Origin: Octopus sinensis
Taxonomy: Eukaryota
DNA: 20,051 nucleotides
NCBI RefSeq assembly: GCF_006345805.1
Contig: NW_021824037.1
Span: 1-20,051, forward strand
Direction: 5' to 3'
A model generated the notes under the pieces. The model worked only from the letters and a program-made list of their open reading frames with translations. It did not search any database and was not told the DNA's origin. Below, piece after piece: positions 1-20,051 of the stretch. The translations under genes and the position numbers were made by a program. Position 1 is the stretch's first letter. Each line of letters begins with the position of its first letter.

Positions 1-110
1 CGAAATTTTCTCAGACACCTGATGAAGGCTGGAGAGTATATCAGTCGAAACGGTGTGTTAACAACAAACAAGATGAGGGCAATATCCGTAAAATGTAAAT
101 AATGTACATA
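1..110 (+). mobile_element. 3' part of HHR-bearing SINE-like element (family A), cut by the window edge
   Basis: Near-identical to 16395-16505 (+) and to the reverse complement of 11521-11625: ...CAGACACCTGATGAAGGCTGGAGAGTATATCAGTCGAAACGGTGTGTTAACAACAAACAAGATGAGG...AAATGTAAATAATGT. Confidence 0.85.
14..59 (+). ncRNA. Type-I hammerhead ribozyme motif, family A, with mutated cleavage triplet
   Basis: Stem I GACAC(14-18)/GTGTT(55-59); core CTGATGA(19-25) plus an extra A; stem II GGCTG(27-31)/CAGTC(42-46); GAAA(47-50); then CGGT where the other copies have CGTT, so conserved U16.1 is lost. Confidence 0.65.
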
Positions 111-1016: not shown

Positions 1017-1024
1017 TATATATA

Positions 1025-1140
1025 GGCGCAGGAATGGCTCTGTGGTAAGAAGCTTGCTTACCAATCGCATGGTTTCAGGTTCAGTCCCAATGCACAGCAC
1101 CTTGGGCAAGTGTCTTCTACTATAGCCTCAGGCCAACCAT
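1025..1140 (+). mobile_element. tRNA-derived SINE family 1, 5' part
   Basis: GGCGCAGGAATGGCTCTGTGGTAAGAAGCTTGCTTACCAA...GGTTCAGTCCC...CCTTGGGCAAGTGTCTTCTACTATAGCC; A/B-box-like head; homologous to six other copies in the window. Confidence 0.9.
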
Positions 1141-2071: not shown

Positions 2072-2270
2072 TGATTTCACATTTTGTCACAAGGGCAACA
2101 ATTTTGGGGGAGGGGATTAATCAATTACATCAGCCCCAGTGTCCAACTGGTACATATTTTTTTGACCCCTAAAGGATGTAAGATAAAGTCAAACTCAGAC
2201 ATAACAACAGGCAAAATACTGCTAAGCATTTCATCCAGGGTACTAAAGGTTTTGCCAGCTTACTGCCTTA
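2072..2270 (-). mobile_element. SINE family 2, diverged copy
   Basis: Minus strand begins TAAGGCAGTAAGCTGGCAAAACC...AAATGCTTAGCAGTATTT; homologous to 2305-2517, 11483-11520 and 17693-17800. Confidence 0.8.
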
Positions 2271-2304
2271 ATAATAATAATAATAATTATTATTTTTATT
2301 ATTA

Positions 2305-2512
2305 TTTCAAATTTTTGCCACAAGGGAAGTTTGGGAGAGGTGGGGATGAGTCGAATACAATGATCCCAGTATTCAACTGGTACTTATTTTATCAACCCCA
2401 AAAGGAGGAAAGGCAAAGTCGACCTCAGCAGAATTTGAACTCAGAACATAGCGACAGGCAACATACCACTAAGCATTTTGCCCAGTGTGCTAAATGCTTT
2501 GCCAGTGCACCG

Positions 2513-2517
<5 letters not shown>
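2305..2517 (-). mobile_element. SINE family 2, second tandem copy
   Basis: Shares CCCCAG/CCCAGT...AACTGGTAC, AAAGTC, CTAAGCATTT and TTTGCCAG blocks with the preceding copy; minus strand has a B-box-like GAGTTCAAATTC. Confidence 0.85.
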
Positions 2518-2599
<82 letters not shown>

Positions 2600-3565: not shown

Positions 3566-3604
<39 letters not shown>

Positions 3605-3652
3605 GCTATTATCATTATCATTAATATTCTTCTCCTTCTCTTTCTTCTCCTT

Positions 3653-3726
<74 letters not shown>

Positions 3727-3782
3727 CATTATTATTATTATTATTATTAATTTTACGGTTTTTATTATTCTGATTATTATTC
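3388..3782. repeat. Compound (CAT)n/(TAT)n/(CTT)n trinucleotide repeats
   Basis: Directly visible; source of the poly-N/K/I/L pseudo-ORFs. Confidence 0.92.
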
Positions 3783-4033: not shown

Positions 4034-4073
4034 TATGTATATATATGTATATGTGTATATATATATATATATA
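3960..4073. repeat. (TA)/(TG) microsatellite
   Basis: Directly visible. Confidence 0.9.
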
Positions 4074-4078
4074 TTGAA

Positions 4079-4404
4079 GGCGCATGGCTCAGTGGTTAGA
4101 GCGTCGAGCTTACGATCGTGAGGTTGTGAGCTCGAATCCCGGACGGGGCTGCGTGTTGTGTTCTTGAGCAGGCACTTTATTTCACGTTGCTCAGTTCACT
4201 CAGCTGTAGAAATGAGTGCGACGTCACAGGTGCCAAGCTTGTATCGGCCCTTGCCTTCCCTTGGACACATCGGTGAAGTGGAGAGGGGAGGCCGGTATGC
4301 ATGGGCGACTGCTGGTCTTCCATAAAACAACCTTGCCCAGACTTGTGCCTCAGAGGGTATCTCTCTAGGTGCAAACCCATGGTCAGTGCCTGACCGAAGG
4401 GGGT
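4079..4404 (+). mobile_element. tRNA-derived SINE family 3, near full length
   Basis: A box TGGCTCAGTGG, B box GCTCGAATCC, central TGTTGTGTTCTTGAGCAGGCACTTTATTTCACGTTGCTC...CAGCTGTAGAAATGAG; homologous copy at 16546-16890. Confidence 0.88.
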
Positions 4405-4455: not shown

Positions 4456-4803
4456 TTCTTTTATTCATTATACTTTTATTTGTAGCCATGTTGGAACACT
4501 GCCTTTTGTTGGGCAAATCGGCCACAAGGCTTATTCTTTGTAAGCCTAGTACTTATTCTATTGGTCTCTTTTGTCAAACTGTTAAGTTATGGAGACATAA
4601 ATGCACCAACATCGGTTGCCAAGTAATGTTGGGGAGCAGACAAATACACACAACATATATACACACAAACATATATATATATATATATGATGGGCTTCTT
4701 TCAGTTTCCGTCGATCAAATCCACTCACAAGGCTATTGTTGGCCCGAGGCTATAGTAGAAGACATTTGCCCAAGGTGCCATGCATTGGGACTGAACCCGG
4801 AAC
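4456..4803 (-). mobile_element. SINE family 1, composite form (head + internal TA/TG tract + 3' module), 5'-truncated
   Basis: GGGCTTCTTTCAGTTTCCGT...CCGAGGCTATAGTAGAAGACATTTGCCCAAGGTGCC...GGGACTGAACCCGGAAC plus the module CTTATTCTTTGTAAGCCTAGTACTTATTCTATT; reverse complement of the 17165 and 18722 copies. Confidence 0.9.
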
Positions 4804-5639
4804 TACTTTTAACACCAGCATGCTAAAAATAGTAGTCAAAATGACTCAAAACCACAGCTTTCACTTAATACACAAGGCCAAATTCAAAGGAATGAGCAGA
4901 AAATGTTAAGACCCCATACAATGGATGAAAAGAATCAAAAATATAAATCAGACATATCCCTATCACAGTGATTTCAAACATTATGAATGAGCATAAGAAA
5001 ATGGAGGGCATCAATAGGTGGTATTCATAAACTTTTAGACATTATATTATGTCAATTTATTTATTTATTTACTAAAATGACAATTACAAGAATATACATA
5101 CATATATAACTTATTATGCTTTACATATAAAATGTATAAAAATATCAGTATTTATTCAAATATATAACATATAGCAATAGAAATTGGGAAAATATCTTAC
5201 AGCTGTTTCAGCCAAGAGGTAATAATACCTCATTCTACCTTTATTCCTCCAGTAGACTGAAGTAATAAGTAGATGAAATTGAGGTACTTGGGTGTTTCTC
5301 TAGGCTTCATCAGAGATTTTGGAAAGTACATAAGGTTAAATTATAAATTTAAATACACATATATATACATACTTTTAGATCTACATACATATACATAAAT
5401 ATACAGAAATACATATACCTACACTTAAATGTACATGCATATGTGCACGTATATGCATACAAATGAATCAATTATTATTAGTAGTATTAGATGCATTATA
5501 TTATTCATATTAGATAAAATATAAACAGAGGTACAAGAAAGTTATTATAAGAGCAGTAATATTGTAATTTATAAAATCAATATATCTTAAGATTATTTTA
5601 GTTATGTAAGAACGAAACTGTATATACATGAGGAACACA

Positions 5640-6745: not shown

Positions 6746-7244
6746 CCTCCGCCACCAACCATCACCACCACCACCACTACCACCACCATCGCCATCGCCA
6801 TTGCCATTGCCATTGCTACCACTATCGCCATCGCCACCAGTGCCGCAACCACCACCATTCTTACTTCCAATTCTTCCACTACGACGACAACTGCCACCAC
6901 CACTATCACCACTACCACCACCACCACCACCACCACAACCACCACCATCACCGTCAACATCGCCACCACCATTGCCATCATGACTATCATCACAACCACC
7001 GCCGGCTCTACTACAACCACTAACACCACCACCACTTCACAACCATCACCACCACCACCACTTCACAACCATCACCACCACCACAACCAACAACACCACC
7101 ACCACCATCATCACCATTGCCATCATGACTATCATCACAACCAACGCCAGCTCCAGCACCACCACCACTACTACCACCACCACTTCCACCACCATCACTA
7201 CCACCACTACTACCACCACAGCCAATTTCTCTTACTGTTTCCAC

Positions 7245-7277: not shown

Positions 7278-7398
7278 TCTCTCAATCTCGCAGCCATGTC
7301 TGTGCCTATATTTTAATCAAATTAAATTAATTTTGAAAGAAACTTATAAGTTTCACCTGATTGCTTATTCAACCTGATTGCAAAAACACAATCATATA

Positions 7399-7562
7399 GG
7401 CACAGACATGGCTGTGTGATAAGAAACTTGCTTCCCAACCACATGGTTCTGGGTTCAGTCCCACTGCATGGTAACTTGGGCATGTGTCTTCTACTATAGT
7501 CTCAGGCTAACCAAAGCCTTGTAAGTGGACTTCGTAGACGGAAACTGAAAGAAGTCCATCGT
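7399..7562 (+). mobile_element. SINE family 1 head and body; 3' module resumes at ~7825-7905
   Basis: GGCACAGACATGGCTGTGTGATAAG...GGGTTCAGTCCCACTGC...GGAAACTGAAAGAAGTCCATCG; the downstream CATCGCTTGACAACCAATG matches the module in the 17165 and 18722 copies. Confidence 0.9.
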
Positions 7563-7565
7563 ATA

Positions 7566-7602
<37 letters not shown>

Positions 7603-10009: not shown

Positions 10010-10169
10010 GGGTTTCTTCTACTTTCCTATCTACCAAATCCATGCAGACGGCTTTGGCTGGCCCTGGGGCTATAGAAGAAGATGCTTGCCCAATGTACCA
10101 CACAAGAATTGAACCCAAAACCCAGAACCACATGGTTTGGGAGTAAACTTCTTACCACATAGCTATGCC
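10010..10169 (-). mobile_element. SINE family 1, diverged copy
   Basis: CTACCAAATCC...GGCTATAGAAGAAGATGCTTGCCCAA...AACCACATGGTTTGGGAGTAAACTTCTTACCAC matches family 1 in reverse orientation. Confidence 0.8.
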
Positions 10170-10394: not shown

Positions 10395-10995
<601 letters not shown>

Positions 10996-11482
10996 TATAC
11001 ATGCACAAACAAGCACAGATATATGTATGTTTATCTATCTAATTACCATCAACTTTGCATAACTGACCCTCCCACTGTATCAATACAGTCTCATAGATTT
11101 CTTAATCCTTTTCTTTGTCTTTTTCTTCTCCTTCTATTCATATTTTGATTGTCATGTTTCTCCAATATTTTCTCTATATTTTTCTGTACCATTTCCAACA
11201 TTTTCAGTATATATATTGTTATTTATTTCTATAATATATTTTCTATCCTCACTAAATTTCCCTATTTTCTCCATTATTTTTGCGTAATTCCATTTTCCAT
11301 CATATCTCTGACTTTTATCGCAGTTGCTTCCAACCTCTGACCATTCCTCAAAATCAGCTTCCTTGATGCTGAGATTTTTCCCTCCTTCTTCCTTTGATAC
11401 ATTCTAATTGTCTTGTCATATATTTTTAATCTCGATACTTAACTGTTTTAATTTCTAGTACTCTTAACTATTATTTTTTTTG

Positions 11483-11520
11483 TAAGGCAGCAAGCTGGCT
11501 GAATCATTAGTGTGCTGGAC
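11483..11520 (+). mobile_element. SINE family 2, 5' stub truncated by the family A element
   Basis: TAAGGCAGCAAGCTGGCTGAATCATTAG matches the family 2 start; the family A tail follows directly. Confidence 0.6.
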
Positions 11521-11769
11521 ATTATTTACATTTGATGGATATTTGTCCTCTCCTATTTGTTGTTAACACAACGTTTCGACTGATATACCCTCCAGCCTTC
11601 ATCAGGTGTCTTGGGGAACTTTCGAACCTGGGTTCTCATTCCTAAGGTATTTCTTCTTCTTCTTCTTCTTCTTATTATTATTATTATTCAGGTCGCTGCC
11701 TGGAATCGATCTCGGAATCTTGAGGGTAGTAGCCTGCGCTCTTAACCACTACACCATATGCCCACGAGC
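11521..11769 (-). mobile_element. Full family A element: tRNA-like head + (AAT)n(AAG)n linker + HHR-bearing body
   Basis: Minus strand: GGGCATA-TGGTGTAGTGG (A box, 11746-11756)...GAGATCGATTCCA (B-box-like, 11701-11713), simple-repeat linker 11651-11688, body with HHR, tail AAATGTAAATAAT. Confidence 0.85.
11565..11610 (-). ncRNA. Type-I hammerhead ribozyme motif, family A, core intact
   Basis: GACAC-CTGATGA-A-GGCTG-GAGGGTATAT-CAGTC-GAAA-CGTT-GTGTT: all core nucleotides present, minimal palindromic stem III (AACGTT), GUU triplet. Confidence 0.8.
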
Positions 11770-11790
11770 ATATAATAATGATAATAATAA

Positions 11791-14700
11791 TAACATAAAA
11801 AAATACCGAGGAATGAGAACACAGGTTCAAAATTTCCCCAAGATACCTGATGAAGGCTGGAGGGTGATAACATCAAAAAATACCTAGGAATGAGAACACA
11901 GGTTCAAAATTTCCCCAAGATACCTGATGAAGGCTGGAGGGTGATAATATCAAAAAATACCTAGGAATGAGAACGCAAGTTCAAAATTTCCCCAAGATAC
12001 CTGATGAAGGCTGGAGGGTGATAATATCAAAAATACCTAGGAATGAGAACACAGGTTCCAAAATTTCCCAAGATACCTGATGAAGGCTGGAGGGTGATAA
12101 TATCAAAAAATACCTAGGAATGAGAAACAGGTTCAAAAATTTCCCCAAGATACCTGATGAAGGCTGGGGGTGATAATATCAAAAAAATACCTAGAATGAG
12201 AACACAGGTTCAAAATTTCCCCAAGATACCTGATGAAGGCTGGAGGGTGATAATATCAAAAAATACCTGGGAATGAGAACACAGGTTCAAAATTTCCCCA
12301 AGATACCTGATGAAGGCTGGAGGGTGATAATATCAAAAAATACCTAGGAATGAGAACACAGGTTCAAAATTTCCCCAAGATACCTGATGAAGGCTGGAGG
12401 GTGATAATATCAAAAAATACCTAGGAATGAGAACACAGGTTCAAAATTTCCCCAAGATACCTGATGAAGGCTGGAGGGTGATAATATCAAAAAATACCTA
12501 GGAATGAGAACACAGGTTCCAAAATTTCCCCAAGATACCTGATGAAGGCTGAGGGTGAGAAACATCAAAAAATACCTAGGAATGAGAACACAAGTTCAAA
12601 ATTTCCCCAAGATACCTGAAGGCTGGAGGGTGATAATATCAAAAAATACCTAGGAATGAGAACACAAGTTCAAAATTTCCCCAAGATACCTGATGAAGGC
12701 TGGAGGGTGATAATATCAAAAAAATACCTAGGAATGAAACCACAAGTTCAAAATTTCCCCAAGATACCTGATGAAGGCTGGAGGTGTGATAACATCAAAA
12801 AAATACCTGGAATGAGAACACAAGTTCAAAATTCCCCAAGATACTGAGGATTGGAGGTGATAATATCAAAAAATACTAGGAATGAGAACACAAGTTCAAA
12901 ATTTCCCAAGATACCTGATGAAGGCTGGAGGGTGATAATATCAAAAAATACCTAGGAATGAGAACACAAGTTCAAAATTTTCCCAAGATACCTGATGAGG
13001 CTGGAGGGGATAACATCAAAAAATACCTAGGAATGAGAACACAAGTTCAAAATTCCCCAAGATACCTGAAGCGCTGGAGGGTGATATATATCAAAAAATA
13101 ACCTAGGAATGAGAACACAAGTTCAAAATTTCCCCAAGATACCTGATGAAGGCTGGAGGGTGATAATATCAAAAAATACCTAGGAATGAGAACACAGGTC
13201 AAAATTTCCCCAAGATACCTGATGAAGGCTGGAGGGTGATAACATCAAAAAAATACCTAGGAATGAGAACACAAGTTCAAAATTTCCCAAGATACTGAAG
13301 GCTGGAGGGTGATAATATCAAAAAAACTAGGAATGAGAACACAAGTTCAAAATTTCCCCAAGATACCTGAAGGCTGAGGGTGATAATATCAAAAAGTACC
13401 TAGGAATGAGAACACAAGTTCAAAAATTTCCCAAGATACCTGATGAGGCTGGAGGGTGATAATATCAAAAAAATACCTAGGAATGAGAACACAAGTTCAA
13501 AATTTCCCCAAGATACCTGATGAAGGCTGGAGGGTGATAACATCAAAAAATACCTAGGAATGAGAACACAAGTTCAAAATTTCCCCAAGATACCTGAAGG
13601 CTGGAGGGTGATAATATCAAAAAATACCTAGGAATGAGAACACAAGTTCAAAATTTCCCCAAGATACCTGATGAAGGCTGGAGGGTGATAATATCAAAAA
13701 ATACCTAGGAATGAGAACACAGGTTCAAAATTTCCCCAAGATACCTGATGAAGGCTGGAGTGATAATATCAAAAAATACCTAGGAATGAGAACACAGGTT
13801 CAAAATTTCCCCAAGATACCTGATGAAGGCTGGAGGGTGATAAATATCAAAAATACCTAGGAATGAGAACACAAGTTCAAAAATTCCCCAAGATACTGAT
13901 GAAGGCTGGAGGGTGATAATATCAAAAAATACCTAGGAATGAGAACACAGTCAAAATTTCCCCAAGATACCGATGATGATGGAAGGCCAAGATTGGAGGG
14001 TGATAATATCAAAAAATACCTAGGAATGAGAACACAAGTTCAAAATTTCCCCAAGATACCTGAAGGCTGGAGGGTGATAATATCAAAAAATACCTAGGAA
14101 TGAGAACACAAGTTCAAAATTTCCCCAAGATACCTGATGAAGGCTGGAGGGTGATAACATCAAAAAATACCTAGGAATGAGAACACAAGTTCAAAATTTC
14201 CCCAAGATACCTGAAGGCTGGAGGGTGATAATATCAAAAAATACCTAGGAATGAGAACACAAGTTCAAAATTTCCCCAAGATACCTGATGAAGGCTGGAG
14301 GGTGATAACATCAAAAAATACCTAGGAATGAGAACACAAGTTCAAAATTTCCCCAAGATACCTGAAGGCTGGAGGGTGATAATATCAAAAAATACCTAGG
14401 AATGAGAACACAAGTTCAAAATTTCCCCAAGATACCTGATGAAGGCTGGAGGGTGATAACATCAAAAAATACCTAGGAATGAGAACACAAGTTCAAAATT
14501 TCCCCAAGATACCTGAAGGCTGGAGGGTGATAATATCAAAAAATACTAGGAATGAGACACAAGTTCAAAATTTCCCCAAGATACCTGAAGGCTGGAGGGT
14601 GATAATATCAAAAAATACCTAGGAATGAGAACACAAGTTCAAAATTTCCCCAAGATTACCTGAAGGCTGGAGGGTGATAATATCAAAAAATACCTAGGAA

Positions 14701-16432
14701 TGAGAACACAAGTTCAAAATTTCCCAAGATACCTGAAGGCTGGAGGGTGATAATATCAAAAAATACCTAGGAATGAGAACACAAGTCAAAATTTCCCCAA
14801 GATACCTGATGAAGGCTGGAGGGTGATAATATCAAAAATACCTAGGAATGAGACACAAGTTCAAAATTTCCCCAAGATACCTGATGAAGGCTGGAGGGTG
14901 ATAATATCAAAAAATACTAGGAATGAGAACACAAGTTCAAAATTTCCCCAAGATACCTGATGAAGGCTGGAGGGTGATAATATCAAAAAAATACCTAGGA
15001 ATGAGAACACAAGTTCAAAATTTCCCAAGACACCTGATGAAGGCGGAGGGTGATAATATCAAAAAATACCTAGGAATGAGAAACACAAGTTCAAAATTTC
15101 CCCAAAGATACCTGAAGGCTGGAGGGTGATAATATCAAAAAATACCTAGGAATGAGAACACAAGTTCAAAATTTCCCCAAGATACCTGATGAAGGCTGGA
15201 GGGTGATAACATCAAAAAATACCTAGGAATGAGAACACAAGTTCAAAATTTCCCCAAGATACCTGAAGGCTGGAGGGTGATAATATCAAAAAATACCTAG
15301 GAATGAGAACACAAGTTCAAAATTTCCCCAAGATACCTGAAGGCTGGAGGGTGATAATATCAAAAAATACCTAGGAATGAGAACACAAGTTCAAAATTTC
15401 CCCAAGATACCTGATGAAGGCTGGAGGGTGATAATATCAAAAAATACCTAGGAATGAGAACACAAGTTCAAAATTTCCCCAAGATACCTGATGAAGGCTG
15501 GGGGTGATATATCAAAAAAATACCTAGGAATGAGAACACAAGTTCAAAATTTCCCCAAGATACCTGATGAAGGCTGGAGGGTGATAATATCAAAAAATAC
15601 CTAGGAATGAGAACACAAGTTCAAAATTTCCCCAAGATACCTGATGAAGGCTGGAGGGTGATAATATCAAAAAATACCTAGGAATGAGAACACAAGTTCA
15701 AAATTTCCCCAAGATACCTGATGAAGGCTGGAGGGTGATAATATCAAAAAATACCTAGGAATGAGAACACAAGTTCAAAATTTCCCCAAGATACCTGATG
15801 AAGGCTGGAGGGTGATAATATCAAAAAATACCTAGGAATGAGAACACAAGTTCAAAATTTCCCCAAGATACCTGATGAAGGCTGGAAGGTGTAATATCAA
15901 AAAAATACCTAGGAATGAGAACACAAGTTAAAAATTTACCCAAGATACCTGAAGGCTGGAGGGTGATAAATATCAAAAAATAAACCTAGAATGAGAAACA
16001 CAAGTTCAAAATTTCCCCAAGATACCTGATGAAGGCTGGAGGGTGATAATATCAAAAAATACCTAGGAATGAGAAACACAAGTTCAAAATTTCCCAAGAT
16101 ACCTGATGAAGGCTGGAGGGTGATAATATCAAAAAAATACCTAGGAATGGAACACAAGTTCAAATTTCCCCAAGATACCTGATGAAGACTGGAGGGTGAT
16201 AATACATCAAAAAATACCTAGGAATGAGAACACAAGTTCAAAAATTTCCCCAAGATACCTGATGAAGACTGGAGGGTGATAATATCAAAAAATACCTAGG
16301 AATGAGAACACAGTTCAAAAATTTCCCCAAGATACCTGATGAAGGCTGGAGGGTGATAATATCAAAAAATACCTAGGAATGAGAACACAAGTTCAAAATT
16401 TCTCCAAGACACCTGATGAAGGCTGGAGGGTG
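11791..16432 (+). repeat. Tandem array of about 60 units of ~77 bp (74-78) derived from the family A body
   Basis: Consensus GAATGAGAACACAAGTTCAAAATTTCCCCAAGATACCTGATGAAGGCTGGAGGGTGATAATATCAAAAAATACCTAG. Matches the inverted element body AATACCTTAGGAATGAGAACCCAGGTTCGAAAGTTCCCCAAGACACCTGATGAAGGCTGGAGGGT. Unit count is estimated from span divided by period. Confidence 0.97.
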
Positions 16433-16453
16433 TATCAGCCGAAACGTTGTGTT
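16408..16453 (+). ncRNA. Type-I hammerhead ribozyme motif, family A, best copy; predicted cleavage after 16448
   Basis: GACAC(16408-12) CTGATGA(16413-19) A GGCTG(16421-25)...CAGCC(16436-40) GAAA(16441-44) CGTT GTGTT(16449-53); stem II is fully Watson-Crick. Confidence 0.82.
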
Positions 16454-16517
16454 AACAACAAACAAGATGAGGACAAATATCCGTCAAATGTAAATAATGT
16501 AAATAATGTAAATAATG
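16454..16517 (+). mobile_element. Family A 3' tail with (AATGTAAAT)x3 terminal repeat
   Basis: AACAACAAACAAGATGAGGACAAATATCCGTC then a 9-bp unit three times at 16487-16513. Confidence 0.8.
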
Positions 16518-16545
16518 AACATTTGTACTATTCTATACTTTATAA

Positions 16546-16890
16546 GGCACCTGGCGCAATGGTTAGAACTTTGGGCTCACAATCATGAGGTAGTGAGTTC
16601 AATTCCCACACTGGGCTGTGTGCTGTGTTCTTGAGCAAGACACTTTATTTCATGTTGCTCCAGTTCACCAAGCTGTAGAAATGAATTGTGACATCACTGG
16701 TTCCAAGCTGTGTCAACCCCCTTTGCCTTAACCTTGGGCAACATCGGTGGCAGGTGAGGTGAGGTGAGGTTCTCAAGTAGTGGTGGGACATATTGATGCA
16801 CGCTGCTGGTCTTCCATGAACCTTACCTGGAATTGTGCCTCAGATGAGAACTTTTCTAGGTGCAATCCCATGGTCATTCATGACCGAAGA
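16546..16890 (+). mobile_element. tRNA-derived SINE family 3, diverged copy
   Basis: TGGCGCAATGG, GAGTTCAATTCCC, TGTGTTCTTGAGCAAGACACTTTATTTC...CTAGGTGCAATCCCATGGTC...TGACCGAAG, collinear with 4079-4404. Confidence 0.88.
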
Positions 16891-17164
16891 GCACAAACAT
16901 AGCTGGGGGGGCGGAGGCAGTAGGGGCAGTCCACCTTGAACGGAACTTCTAAAGGGGCACCACCTTTGGGTCTACTGTAGGTAGTATGTGCTTTTGTGTG
17001 GTGTCCGGGGGTGGAAAATGGAAGGGCCGACCCAGGTGCGCACACTCTAGCTAGTGTCGAAGGCGGTTTCTTACCCTTTACCCTTTTAATAAACATTAAT
17101 GAAATACTGAAAACTTTCTTAGTATTTTATGTTTTATAAAGCATGCAAGTGTTTCGATATATAT

Positions 17165-17572
17165 GAGTGGCTGTGTGGTAAGTAAGCTTGCTTACCAACC
17201 ACATGGTTCCAGGTTCAATCCCACTGCGTGGCATCTTGGGCAAGTGTCTTCTACTATAGCCTTGGGCCAACCAAAGCCTTGTGAGTGGATTTGGTAGACA
17301 GAAACTGAAAGAAGCCCGTTGTATATATGTATATATATCTATGTGTGTGTGTATGTTTGTGTGTCTGTGTTTGTCACCCCCTAGCATTGCTTGACAACCG
17401 ATGCTGGTGTGTTTACGTCACCGTCACTTAGTGGTTCGTCAAAAGATATATCGATAGAATAAGTACTGGGCTTACAAAGAATAAGTCCCGGGGTCGATTT
17501 GCTTGACTAAAAGGCGGTGCTCCAGCATGGCCGCAGTCAAATGACTGAAAACAAGTAAAAGAGTAAAAGAGA
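17165..17572 (+). mobile_element. SINE family 1, full composite copy
   Basis: Head, body, internal TA/TG tract, 3' module (AGAATAAGTCCCGGGGTCGATTTG...CCAGCATGGCCGCAGTCAAATGACTG) and (AGTAAAAG) tail. Confidence 0.92.
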
Positions 17573-17884: not shown

Positions 17885-18056
17885 TCTATCTATCTATCTA
17901 TCTACCTACCTACCTACTTGCCTACCTACCTATCTATCTATCTATCTATCTATAAATATATATATATATTCATCTATCTATCTATTTATCTATCTATCTA
18001 TCTGTCTATCTATCTATCTATCTATCTATCTGTCTATCTATCTATCTATCTATCTG

Positions 18057-18099
<43 letters not shown>

Positions 18100-18108
18100 G
18101 TCTATCTG

Positions 18109-18154
<46 letters not shown>

Positions 18155-18190
18155 AACCTATCTATCTACCAATCTATCTATCTATCTACC
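17885..18190. repeat. (TCTA)n tetranucleotide microsatellite
   Basis: About 300 bp of TCTA/CCTA/TCTG units. Confidence 0.96.
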
Positions 18191-18721: not shown

Positions 18722-18882
18722 GCAGGAGTGGCAGTGTGGTAAGTAGCTTGCTTACCAACCACACGCTTCTGGGTTCAGTCCCACTGCGTGGTACCTTGGG
18801 CAAGTGTCTTCTACTATAGCCTACGGCAACCAAAGCCTTGTGAGTGTATTTGATAGACGGAAATTGAAAGAAGCCCGTCATA

Positions 18883-18923
<41 letters not shown>

Positions 18924-19102
18924 GTGTGTGTATATGTTTGTCCTCCCAACATCGCTTGACTACCGATGGTGGTGTGCTTACATCCCTGTAACTTAGTGGT
19001 TTGGCAAAAGAGACCAATAGAATAAGTACTAGGCTTACAAAGAATAAGTCCTGGGTCAATTTACTCGACTAAAGGTGGTGCTCCAGCATGGCCGCAGTCA
19101 AA
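18722..19102 (+). mobile_element. SINE family 1, composite copy
   Basis: Collinear with 17165-17540. Confidence 0.92.
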
Positions 19103-19343
19103 GATGTTGGGGTGACAAACACAGACACACAAACACATACACACGTACATTTATATATATACATATATACATATATACGACGGGCTTCTTTCAGTTTCCG
19201 TCTACCAAATCCACTCACAAGGCTTTGGTCGGCCCGAGGCTATAGTAGAAGACACTTGCCCAAGATGCCACGCAGCGGGACTGAACCCAATACCATGTGG
19301 TTGGTAAAGCAAGCTACTTACCACACAGCCACTCCCACGCCTA
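19103..19343 (-). mobile_element. SINE family 1, inverted copy abutting the previous one
   Basis: Reverse complement of the head, body and TA/TG tract of 18722-18950. Confidence 0.92.
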
Positions 19344-19404: not shown

Positions 19405-20051
19405 TGTATGTATGCGTGTGTGTTTGTGTGTGTGTGTGTGTGTGTTTTTCTGTTTTCTGCATCTGAGTATGTATATGTGTATGCTTGTGTGAGTATGTGT
19501 GGTGTGTGTGTGTACGCGTGTGTGTGTATGTATATGTGTATGCGTGTGTGTGTGTGCATATGTGTGTATGTATGTGTGTGTGTATGAGTGTTTTATCTAT
19601 TTTCTGCACCTGAGTGTGTGTATGTATGTATATGTATGTGTGTATGCGTGTGTGTATGTGTGTGTGAATGCGTGTGTGAGTGTATGTGTGTGTGTGTGAG
19701 TGCGTTTTATCTATTTTTTGCATCTGAGTGTGTGTATGTATGTATATGTGTATGTATGTGTGTGTGTGTGTGTGTGTGTCTATGCATGTGTGTGTGTTTT
19801 TTAATCTATTCAACTATTTTCTGTATATGTGTGTTCATGTATGTGTGTGTATGTGTGTACGTGAGTGTGTTTTATCTATTTTCTGCATCTGAATGTGTGC
19901 GTGTGTGTGTGCGTGTATGTATGTGTGTATGCGCCTGTGTGTGTAATTGCATGCGTGAGCGTGAGTGTGTGTCTATATATGTCTCTATGGCAGTGTGTGC
20001 ATGTGTGAATGTCTGTTTTATCTATTTATCTATTTTCTGTATGTGTGTGCG
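19405..20051. repeat. TG-rich irregular minisatellite with a recurring ~25-bp motif
   Basis: TTTATCTATTTTCTGCA(T/C)CTGAGTGTGTG variants near 19446, 19591, 19706, 19800, 19870 and 20017, separated by (TG)-type tracts. Confidence 0.8.

What the first reader, a model, noticed from the sequence alone, without database searches (positions are those of the whole stretch)
11791..16517. 4.6-kb satellite made of about 60 half-ribozymes, capped by one complete ribozyme
Seen: each ~77-bp unit has the stem I 5' strand, the CTGATGA core and the stem II 5' strand but lacks CAGCC-GAAA-CGTT-GTGTT. Only the last unit runs on into the full HHR and the element tail. So the array is an internal amplification inside one retroelement copy. 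Established: HHR-containing satellites exist (newt satellite 2, Schistosoma Sm-alpha, cricket pDo500) but carry a whole ribozyme per monomer. Inference: a young satellite caught emerging from a ribozyme-bearing SINE, with a different architecture from those examples.
Basis: partly seen in the sequence, partly recalled or inferred. Interest (0 to 1): 0.85.

Follow-up and report, generated by a model that had tools for sequence, protein, structure and literature searches.

The report
Tandem array of truncated hammerhead repeats
A 4.6-kb block of 61 head-to-tail copies of a 77-bp piece of a short ribozyme-bearing repeat is real, but it looks like an ordinary local DNA amplification of a transposon fragment, and the copies cannot work as ribozymes.

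Summary
The array is real. TRF places it at 11790-16432, with 61 units of about 77 bp. Only the last unit continues into the 3' half of the motif and the element tail.

Three corrections to the finding:
- Only 43 of 61 units keep CTGATGA. Seventeen carry a 3-nt deletion in that box, and one is scrambled.
- The "complete ribozyme" is a minimal hammerhead of the Penelope-like-element (PLE) type. It has no helix III loop, no Rfam hammerhead model matches it, and published examples are inactive as monomers.
- The unit includes about 11-14 nt of AT-rich upstream linker, so it is not strictly internal to the element.

Both edge units keep ancestral bases shared with solo copies. Private substitutions are about 0.5%, against 7-13% between dispersed copies. 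Three identical 151-bp (77+74) dimers show stepwise amplification.

Best reading: a local duplication followed by unequal exchange, that is, a tandem array born from a transposon fragment. The ribozyme was cut by accident. The SINE label is unsupported. An inverted solo copy 140 bp upstream fits PLE-style head-to-head insertions. No genome or read data were available, so uniqueness of the locus, assembly accuracy and expression remain untested. Interest is modest.

The parts
11790..16432 (+). Tandem array of 61 units. The consensus 77-mer is ATAATATCAAAAAATACCTAGGAATGAGAACACAAGTTCAAAATTTCCCCAAGATACCTGATGAAGGCTGGAGGGTG. Each unit holds an AT-rich linker plus the 5' ~63 nt of family A, ending in loop 2 of the hammerhead.
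   Evidence: TRF; unit dissection; alignment of the units with the solo copies; 43 intact CTGATGA boxes, 17 with the 3-nt deletion, 1 scrambled.
14003..14529 (+). Higher-order stretch, units 30-36, where 74-bp units (box-deleted, ATAACATC in units 32, 34 and 36) alternate with 77-bp units. Units 31-36 are three identical 151-bp dimers.
   Evidence: TRF period 151 scores 7923 against 7715 for period 77. The type string is dAdAdAd, and five 74-mers are identical.
16356..16500 (+). The one complete family A copy on this strand: unit 61 plus the 3' half and tail (TATCAGCCGAAACGTTGTGTTAACAAC...AAATGTAAATAATGT).
   Evidence: Sequence; 90.6% identity to the solo copy over 138 nt; three-copy alignment A1.
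16408..16453 (+). Minimal type I hammerhead motif. Helix I is GACAC/GUGUU (5 bp). The core CUGAUGA is followed by an unpaired A. Helix II is GGCUGG/UCAGCC (6 bp, one G-U). After GAAA, C15.2-G16.2 are adjacent with no loop, then U16.1 and U17. The predicted cleavage site is after 16448.
   Evidence: Descriptor scan with 0 hits in 300 shuffles; pair counts 33/33; no Rfam hammerhead match.
16487..16517 (+). The 3'-terminal 9-mer AATGTAAAT, expanded to 3.4 copies. The other two copies have about one.
   Evidence: TRF; alignment A1.
11516..11650 (-). Solo family A copy, head-to-head with the array. It holds a complete min-hammerhead at 11565-11610 (-).
   Evidence: BLAST; descriptor scan; inverted repeats I1/I2, 57-58 nt at 93% complementarity to units 1-2.
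11651..11789 (.). Spacer between the two head-to-head copies. It holds a (TTC)n(ATT)n linker (11651-11688), an 85-bp unique segment (11689-11773) and an (AAT)n-rich linker (11774-11789). The two linkers are 79% complementary to each other.
   Evidence: Sequence; inverted repeats I4/I5; the unique segment is single-copy in the window and has no tRNA hit.
1..108 (+). Third family A copy, cut by the start of the window. Its motif is spoiled at U16.1 (GAAACGGT).

Best explanation
A short (~135 bp) dispersed repeat carrying a Penelope-like-element (PLE) type minimal hammerhead was inserted here, head-to-head with a second copy about 140 bp away. Later, a 77-bp segment was duplicated in tandem at the DNA level. 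That segment runs from the AT-rich linker just upstream of the repeat to a point inside loop 2 of the hammerhead.

The duplication was then expanded and homogenised by repeated unequal exchange or replication slippage, to 61 units. One step amplified a 77+74-bp dimer.

The breakpoint in the ribozyme is accidental. Units lack the 3' strand of helix II, the GAAA box, the cleavage site and the 3' strand of helix I, so they cannot self-cleave. The array is best seen as a neutral tandem array born from a transposon fragment.

Shown: the anatomy, the homology, the edge states and the higher-order structure. Inferred: the order of events, the DNA-level mechanism and the lack of function.
For: - The array and its colinearity with a complete copy are established.
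- The unit is homologous to family A over about 58-63 nt, at 84-93%.
- Edge units are the least homogenised. Unit 61 has the ancestral GACACC. Units 1-10 mostly have the ancestral G at unit position 35. Unit 1 has a private linker (ATAACATAAAAAAA) that is continuous with the upstream flank.
- Only 45 substitutions from the consensus occur in 4643 nt, and 22 of them are two shared variants. Dispersed copies differ by 7-13%.
- Three identical 151-bp dimers, and five identical 74-mers, indicate stepwise amplification rather than one burst.
- Seventeen units lost 3 nt of CUGAUGA and were still amplified, so the catalytic box is not under constraint.
- Junctions lie 16 nt upstream of the predicted cleavage site, so units are not products of ribozyme processing.
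- Upstream units lack 3' sequence. That is the opposite of the 5'-truncated partial tandems that PLE reverse transcription produces (PMC8557442).
- Array RNA shows no unusual folding (z = -0.01).
- The motif matches the published min-hammerhead traits: no loop 3, a palindromic 15.2-16.2 pair, an extra nucleotide between A9 and G10.1, a G10.1-C11.1 pair and a short helix I (PMC4209133).
- Published work describes adjacent inverted 5'-truncated copies and a microsatellite insertion bias in PLEs (PMC8557442), and dual min-hammerheads 100-700 bp apart on opposite strands.
- Birth of tandem arrays from TE fragments, and from PLE termini, by duplication plus unequal crossover is an established or already proposed route (PMC5932611, PMC9659126; bioRxiv 10.64898/2026.07.22.740005).
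Against: - No genome, reads or relatives could be searched, so a single-locus origin is inferred from this window only.
- No microhomology explains the founding junction (GGGTG|ATAAC).
- The assignment to PLEs rests on motif traits alone. No reverse transcriptase or GIY-YIG ORF is in the window, and helix II (6 bp) is shorter than the 7-8 bp reported for Schistosoma.
- Only two copies show the 5' end, so whether the linker belongs to the element is open.
- Low divergence can reflect ongoing homogenisation rather than youth.
- Much of the unit-to-unit variation may be sequencing noise.
Confidence: 0.7

Rival explanations
1. The 77-bp repeat is an established genome-wide satellite family with many arrays. 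This locus is just one array, possibly but not necessarily the birthplace, that happens to abut a family A copy.
For: - Satellites often disperse as short arrays and associate with TEs (PMC5139131, PMC10048060, listed).
- The array has higher-order structure and blocks of variants, as mature satellites do.
- No genome was available to exclude other arrays.
Against: - The last unit is in perfect register with a complete family A copy, and it carries the ancestral base of the dispersed copies.
- The first unit's linker is continuous with the local flank.
- No other 77-mer copy lies in the remaining 15 kb of a very repeat-rich window.
Confidence: 0.13
2. The array was made in one step by reverse transcription. 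The routes would be rolling-circle copying of a small circular RNA, or repeated template jumping by a PLE reverse transcriptase during insertion, as proposed for retrozymes and PLE partial tandems.
For: - The array keeps a single 3' half, and target-primed reverse transcription would copy that part first.
- Retrozyme and PLE tandems are attributed to such mechanisms (PMC7229834; PMC4209133).
Against: - Unit boundaries are 16 nt away from the cleavage site, and units lack that site, so no ribozyme-made circle of this register can form.
- PLE partial tandems keep 3' ends and lose 5' ends, which is the reverse of what is seen here.
- The junction carries linker DNA that matches the local upstream flank.
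- Shared variants in blocks, and identical 151-bp dimers, need several rounds of amplification.
Confidence: 0.06
3. The array is largely an assembly artefact, for example a short tandem duplication inflated by a long-read assembler.
For: Against the consensus, 91 indel events compare with 45 substitutions. About 69 of the indels are scattered 1-2-nt events, 31 of them in homopolymers, which is a long-read error signature.
Against: - Ordered blocks of shared variants, distinct edge units and a clean transition into unique flanks on both sides are hard to produce by mis-assembly.
- Read noise affects the unit count, not the existence of the array.
Confidence: 0.05
4. The array is functional at the RNA level, in one of two ways. 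Its transcripts could supply or sequester hammerhead 5' halves in trans, acting as a split ribozyme or a decoy. Alternatively, together with the inverted solo copy, they could form hairpin RNA that feeds small-RNA silencing of the repeat family.
For: - 43 units keep helix I 5' strand, CUGAUGA and helix II 5' strand.
- The inverted solo copy is 93% complementary to units over 57-58 nt, only 165-240 nt away.
Against: - 28% of units have lost the catalytic box.
- A trans complex would rest on 5 bp + 6 bp with several G-U pairs. It would also need two 3' halves to build helix III, because the motif has no loop 3 (PMC4209133).
- Folding is not unusual.
- No expression data are available.
Confidence: 0.05

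Closest known systems
Minimal hammerhead ribozymes of Penelope-like elements (Cervera & de la Pena 2014, PMC4209133; Lunse, Weinberg & Breaker 2017, known here by title only from the reference list seen)
   Same: The complete motif (16408-16453, and 11565-11610 on the minus strand) shares the defining traits. It is type I. It has no helix III loop and a palindromic 15.2-16.2 pair (AACGUU). It has an unpaired nucleotide between A9 and G10.1, a G10.1-C11.1 pair and a 5-bp helix I. It occurs mostly as solo dispersed copies, and here as a nearby pair on opposite strands.
   Different: No PLE ORF or pLTR context is in the window. Helix II is 6 bp, against 7-8 bp in Schistosoma. No same-strand intact partner lies nearby to form the dimer. 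Activity is untested.
Non-LTR retrozymes and classical hammerhead satellites (newt satellite 2, Schistosoma Sm-alpha, cricket pDo500; PMC7229834)
   Same: All are tandem head-to-tail arrays of low GC content, built from sequence that carries a type I hammerhead and is probably related to PLE termini.
   Different: Those have one complete, usually canonical, hammerhead per 170-400-bp monomer, and they are processed into linear and circular RNAs. Here the monomer is 77 bp and stops in loop 2. None of the 60 internal units is complete, and 18 of the 61 units lack even the CUGAUGA box.
Tandem arrays or satellites born from transposon fragments by local duplication and unequal exchange (PMC5932611, PMC9659126, PMC6947457, PMC12628747, PMC7004042). 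The 2026 proposal that PLE termini amplify locally is bioRxiv 10.64898/2026.07.22.740005.
   Same: The monomer is homologous to part of a dispersed repeat. The array is continuous with the rest of that repeat at one edge. The interior is homogenised, the edge units are diverged, and there is a higher-order repeat.
   Different: Only one locus has been seen, so satellite status (abundance, multiple arrays) is unknown. The unit spans the element's 5' boundary and includes linker DNA.
PLE insertion architecture with an inverted 5'-truncated copy next to the upstream end (Craig et al. 2021, PMC8557442)
   Same: Two copies lie head-to-head with microsatellite at the junction, and the hammerhead sits near each 3' end.
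   Different: An 85-bp unique spacer separates the copies. Both copies are only about 135 bp and have the same 5' end. No full-length element is present.

Membership tests
Canonical hammerhead ribozyme (Rfam Hammerhead_1 / HH9 / HH10 / II / 3) | Conserved core boxes CUGAUGA and GAAA, plus a UH cleavage site | tested here: met
   Present at 16413-16449 (+) and 11569-11605 (-). Absent from all 60 internal array units.
Canonical hammerhead ribozyme (Rfam Hammerhead_1 / HH9 / HH10 / II / 3) | Three helices, including a closed helix III hairpin, and a match to the family covariance model | tested here: not met
   A15.1-C15.2 is followed directly by G16.2-U16.1, with no loop. No hammerhead family is listed at gathering score or at E<=10 in 200-nt searches.
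Canonical hammerhead ribozyme (Rfam Hammerhead_1 / HH9 / HH10 / II / 3) | Self-cleavage | not testable with these tools
   Needs in vitro transcription of monomer and dimer constructs.
PLE-type minimal hammerhead (min-HHR) | No helix III or loop 3 in the monomer; palindromic 15.2-16.2 pair that allows a dimeric helix III | tested here: met
   GAAACGUU has C15.2-G16.2 adjacent, inside the 6-nt palindrome AACGUU. The criterion comes from PMC4209133.
PLE-type minimal hammerhead (min-HHR) | Unpaired nucleotide between A9 and G10.1, and a G10.1-C11.1 pair | tested here: met
   In CUGAUGA-A-GGCUGG...UCAGCC-GAAA, the descriptor hit requires bulge = 1 and a G-C closing pair.
PLE-type minimal hammerhead (min-HHR) | Short helix I (4-5 bp) and a longer than usual helix II | tested here: inconclusive
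   Helix I is 5 bp. Helix II is 6 bp including G-U pairs. The paper reports 7-8 bp in Schistosoma and 6 bp in D. virilis.
PLE-type minimal hammerhead (min-HHR) | Location in the terminal repeat of an element encoding reverse transcriptase and GIY-YIG endonuclease | tested here: not met
   The 20-kb window has no non-repetitive ORF of 90 aa or more. Most published min-HHRs are likewise solo, so this does not exclude descent from a PLE.
PLE-type minimal hammerhead (min-HHR) | A second intact copy on the same strand nearby, to form the active dimer | tested here: not met
   The only other plus-strand copy (19-60) is 16 kb away and mutated at U16.1. The near neighbour is on the opposite strand.
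Non-LTR retrozyme / hammerhead satellite | Every tandem monomer carries a complete hammerhead | tested here: not met
   None of the 60 internal units does; only the terminal unit plus its continuation does.
Non-LTR retrozyme / hammerhead satellite | Monomer of about 170-400 bp, expressed as linear and circular RNA | tested here: not met
   The monomer is 77 bp. Expression is not testable here.
   ARAGORN finds nothing in the window. Rfam gives no tRNA hit in or beside the copies. By eye there is only a degenerate B-box-like GGTTCGAAAGT.
   The 3' end ...AAATGTAAATAATGT is shared by three copies and the 5' end AAATACC by two. No target-site duplications were recognised, and the flanks are microsatellites.
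Transposon-fragment-derived tandem array | Homogeneous head-to-tail monomers that are homologous to part of a dispersed repeat and continuous with that repeat at an array edge | tested here: met
Transposon-fragment-derived tandem array | Satellite in the strict sense: many arrays or high genomic abundance | not testable with these tools
   No eukaryotic genome collection was available. Scans of metagenome, prokaryote and viral collections gave nothing real.

The most novel reading that the evidence does not exclude
The array is an expressed locus whose RNA acts on the repeat family. Its 43 intact 5' halves could pair in trans with 3'-half-bearing transcripts, for example 5'-truncated copies, to rebuild or to block the minimal hammerhead (a natural split ribozyme or ribozyme decoy). 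Alternatively, with the inverted solo copy, it could form hairpin RNA that seeds small-RNA silencing of PLE-derived elements.
Probability: 0.04. Interest if true: 0.75.

Novelty: new member of a known kind. Interest (0 to 1): 0.3.

Why it matters
The array itself is ordinary, but it bears on one open question. Tandem arrays of hammerhead-bearing, PLE-related sequence (retrozymes, newt and Schistosoma satellites) are usually explained by ribozyme processing, RNA circles and reverse transcription. Here the same kind of sequence was amplified 61-fold in a register that excludes ribozyme processing. That shows plain DNA-level duplication and unequal exchange can build such arrays. It fits the recent proposal that PLE termini amplify locally. 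It is also a caution for motif-based ribozyme censuses, because a CUGAUGA-based count would find 43 "cores" here and only one complete motif.

Tried and rejected
- **Rfam.** I searched the whole window at gathering score and at E<=10, and three 150-200-nt sub-windows. No hammerhead or tRNA family appeared. The many mir-297/466/3149 sub-threshold hits all sit on TG/TA microsatellites and are false positives.
- **ARAGORN.** No tRNA was found.
- **Prokaryote and viral scans.** One viral 17-mer hit was chance.
- **Literature.** A search for the 16-mer, and for phrases such as "truncated hammerhead", found 0 papers. The supplement of PMC4209133 and the paper PMC5785218 are not held.
- **The CTGATGA...GAAAC hit at 5294-5313 (-).** It is unrelated sequence.
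- **The hit at 12539-12563 inside the array.** It is a mutated linker with no helix II.
- **Helix III alternative.** I considered the hairpin GUUGU-GUUA-ACAAC (16446-16459) as helix III. It is out of register with A15.1 and has no UH after it, so I rejected it. It is instead a competing fold that hides the cleavage site.
- **Lag analysis.** Unit distances by lag gave no clear array-wide higher-order signal, only the local 151-bp stretch.
- **Thermodynamic folding.** Z-scores were unremarkable: -0.81, -0.33 and -0.01.
- **Covariation.** Three copies give one one-sided change and no compensatory change, which is uninformative.
- **Founding junction.** No microhomology was found by eye.


Full report
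**Observation**

Tandem Repeats Finder reports a single large array at 11790-16432. It has period 77, 61.0 copies, 92% matches, 4% indels and score 7715. The same span also scores as period 151 (score 7923). I cut the array into units by aligning the consensus 77-mer along it. This gave 61 units of 71-87 bp, most of them 77, followed by sequence that no longer matches the unit.

The 3' half of the motif, CAGCCGAAACGTTGTGTTAACAAC, occurs three times in the window, allowing up to 3 mismatches. The sites are 16436-16459 (+), immediately after unit 61; 11559-11582 (-); and 42-65 (+). It never occurs inside the array. So the central observation holds: about 60 truncated units, with only the last one running into the rest of the motif and the element tail.

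**Corrections to the observation**

- Only 43 of 61 units contain CTGATGA. Seventeen carry a 3-nt deletion that turns CCTGATGAAGG into CCTGAAGG, giving the 74-bp variant. Unit 29 is scrambled.
- Against the consensus there are 45 substitutions and 91 indel events in 4643 nt. Twenty-two of the substitutions are two shared variants (T5C and A35G). About 69 of the indel events are scattered 1-2-nt events, 31 of them in homopolymers. That pattern looks like long-read noise. Real divergence is probably 1% or less, and the exact unit count is soft.

**The source repeat ("family A")**

BLAST and a three-way alignment define a repeat of about 135 bp with three copies in the window:

- 16367-16500 (+), the end of the array;
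- 11516-11650 (-);
- 1-108 (+), cut by the start of the window.

The three copies share the 3' end ...AAATGTAAATAATGT and diverge after it. The two copies that have a 5' end share AAATACCT(T)AGG. Pairwise identities are 87-93%.

The unit matches family A from AAATACC to GGAGGGTG, about 63 nt. The first 11-14 nt of the unit (ATAAYATCAAA) have no counterpart in the solo copy, which has (GAA)7 at that position. They do match the AT-rich DNA directly upstream of unit 1...AATAATAACATAAAAAAATACC. So the repeated segment spans the element's 5' boundary.

**The ribozyme**

The complete motif reads GACAC-CUGAUGA-A-GGCUGG-(loop)-UCAGCC-GAAA-C-G-U-U|GUGUU. It is a type I hammerhead core with these features:

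- a 5-bp helix I;
- an unpaired A after A9;
- a G10.1-C11.1 pair closing a 6-bp helix II;
- no helix III loop at all. C15.2 and G16.2 are adjacent, inside the palindrome AACGUU.

No Rfam hammerhead family matches at the gathering threshold, or at E<=10 in 200-nt searches of the two complete copies; the 150 rows listed for the whole window hold none either.

These are the traits that Cervera and de la Pena (2014, PMC4209133) list for the "min-HHR" of Penelope-like elements (PLEs). Their list has no helix III or loop 3, palindromic 15.2-16.2, a nucleotide between 9 and 10.1, a conserved G10.1-C11.1 pair and a short helix I. They report no cleavage as monomers and weak cleavage as dimers. They also report that most copies are solo and that some pairs lie 100-700 bp apart on opposite strands.

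A descriptor I wrote from those rules hits only 16408-16453 (+) and 11565-11610 (-), with no hit in 300 shuffles. The copy at the window start fails at U16.1.

With three copies, all 33 pair cells are standard pairs, but there is only one one-sided change. Covariation is therefore uninformative. Energy folding predicts helix II. It also predicts a competing hairpin, GUUGU-GUUA-ACAAC, that covers the cleavage site. Z-scores are ordinary. So "one complete ribozyme" should read [quoted passage not shown].

**Context**

The solo copy at 11516-11650 lies on the minus strand, head-to-head with the founder of the array. It is 93% complementary to units 1 and 2 over 57-58 nt. The complementarity continues at 79% into the (AAT)n(RAA)n linkers on both sides of an 85-bp unique spacer.

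By eye the spacer has tRNA-like boxes, but ARAGORN and Rfam find nothing there. The window has no non-repetitive ORF. It is crowded with microsatellites and other short dispersed repeats.

Craig et al. (2021, PMC8557442) describe PLE insertions as strongly 5'-truncated. They are often accompanied by an inverted 5'-truncated copy at the 5' end, are biased toward microsatellites, and carry the hammerhead near the 3' end. The ancestral locus fits that picture better than a tRNA-derived SINE does.

**How the array arose**

- **Edges.** Both edges keep ancestral states. Unit 61 has GACACC like both solo copies, where 59 of the 61 units have GATACC (units 43 and 61 are the exceptions). Units 1-10 mostly have the G of CAGGTTC, as the solo copy does, while the interior has A. 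Unit 1 has a private linker. Poorly homogenised edge units are what unequal exchange predicts.
- **Interior.** Units 31-36 are three identical 151-bp dimers (77+74). The same 74-mer recurs at units 24 and 46. Amplification therefore happened in several rounds, at least one of them at the dimer level.
- **Against a ribozyme or RNA-circle origin.** Unit junctions lie 16 nt upstream of the predicted cleavage site, and units lack that site.
- **Against PLE-style partial tandems.** Upstream units lack 3' sequence, which is the opposite of what 5' truncation gives.

I conclude that a local DNA duplication was followed by unequal exchange or slippage. Whether rolling-circle amplification of excised DNA contributed cannot be told. 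No microhomology explains the first junction.

**Function**

Units lack helix II 3' strand, GAAA, the cleavage site and helix I 3' strand, so they cannot self-cleave. Loss of the CUGAUGA box in 17 units, and further amplification of that variant, argue against selection on the ribozyme part. Array RNA has no unusual predicted structure (z = -0.01).

A trans-acting split ribozyme would rest on 5-bp and 6-bp intermolecular helices with several G-U pairs. It would still need two 3' halves to form helix III, so I rate it unlikely. A hairpin with the inverted copy is structurally possible but has no supporting data.

**Comparison with known systems**

- The motif belongs with PLE-type minimal hammerheads on four of the sequence criteria tested. 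Helix II length was inconclusive. A PLE ORF and a same-strand partner for the dimer were looked for and not found in the window.
- The array is not a retrozyme or a classical hammerhead satellite. Those carry a complete ribozyme per 170-400-bp monomer (PMC7229834).
- It is a member of the broad and well-documented class of tandem arrays born from transposon fragments (PMC5932611, PMC9659126, PMC6947457, PMC12628747, PMC7004042).
- A 2026 preprint already proposes that PLE termini amplify locally into tandem repeats by duplication and unequal crossover (10.64898/2026.07.22.740005).

**Limits**

No eukaryotic genome, read set or transcriptome could be queried. Scans of metagenome, prokaryote and viral collections returned only chance matches or nothing. 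Locus uniqueness, assembly accuracy, the full-length structure of family A, its PLE partner, expression and catalysis all remain untested. The source organism is unknown. The microsatellite and SINE load suggests an invertebrate genome, but that is only an impression.

**Verdict**

The mechanism and the class are ordinary, and the "half-ribozyme" architecture is most likely an accident of where the duplication breakpoint fell. Its main value is as a natural example that hammerhead-bearing, PLE-type sequence can become a tandem array without any ribozyme involvement.

Noticed in passing
window 11516-11865: The solo family A copy (-) and the first array units (+) form a head-to-head inverted repeat, 57-58 nt at 93% complementarity. 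The complementarity extends at 79% into the (AAT)n(RAA)n linkers around an 85-bp unique spacer (11689-11773). The spacer has tRNA-like boxes by eye but no ARAGORN or Rfam hit.
   Followed up: partly
window 1020-1139, 4485-4803, 7394-7600, 10010-10163, 17165-17541, 18725-19102, 19109-19335: A different dispersed repeat of about 320-385 bp has at least 7 copies at 72-89% identity. The last two copies form a head-to-head inverted pair (18725-19335).
   Followed up: no
window 16530-16900 and 4035-4399: A SINE-like repeat starts about 15 bp after the array's tail. By eye its first 75 nt look tRNA-derived. A second copy at 4035-4399 is about 74% identical. ARAGORN calls no tRNA.
   Followed up: partly
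window 2084-2520 and 11473-11515: Two tandem copies of another SINE-like repeat end in (TAA)n. A 36-40-nt fragment of the same family (83% identity) directly abuts the 3' end of the solo family A copy, which suggests nested insertions.
   Followed up: partly
window 1-20051, e.g. 10422-10985, 6894-7219, 17885-18188, 3566-3781: Microsatellite density is extreme: 55 TRF rows, including (TA)~280, (CCA)~107, (TCTA)76 and (ATT)72. All sub-threshold Rfam microRNA hits (mir-297, mir-466, mir-3149, mir-5014) lie on these repeats and are artefacts.
   Followed up: yes
window 16487-16517: The 9-mer AATGTAAAT at the 3' end of family A is expanded to 3.4 copies only in the array-linked copy. This is a second, small local expansion in the same element.
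   Followed up: partly
window 11790-16432: Scattered 1-2-nt indels outnumber private substitutions about 3 to 1 among units. This suggests the assembly comes from incompletely polished long reads, and other homopolymer lengths in the window may be unreliable too.
   Followed up: partly
window 19535-19795: A 114-bp tandem repeat (2.3 copies, 82% matches) is embedded in a long TG-rich tract.
   Followed up: no
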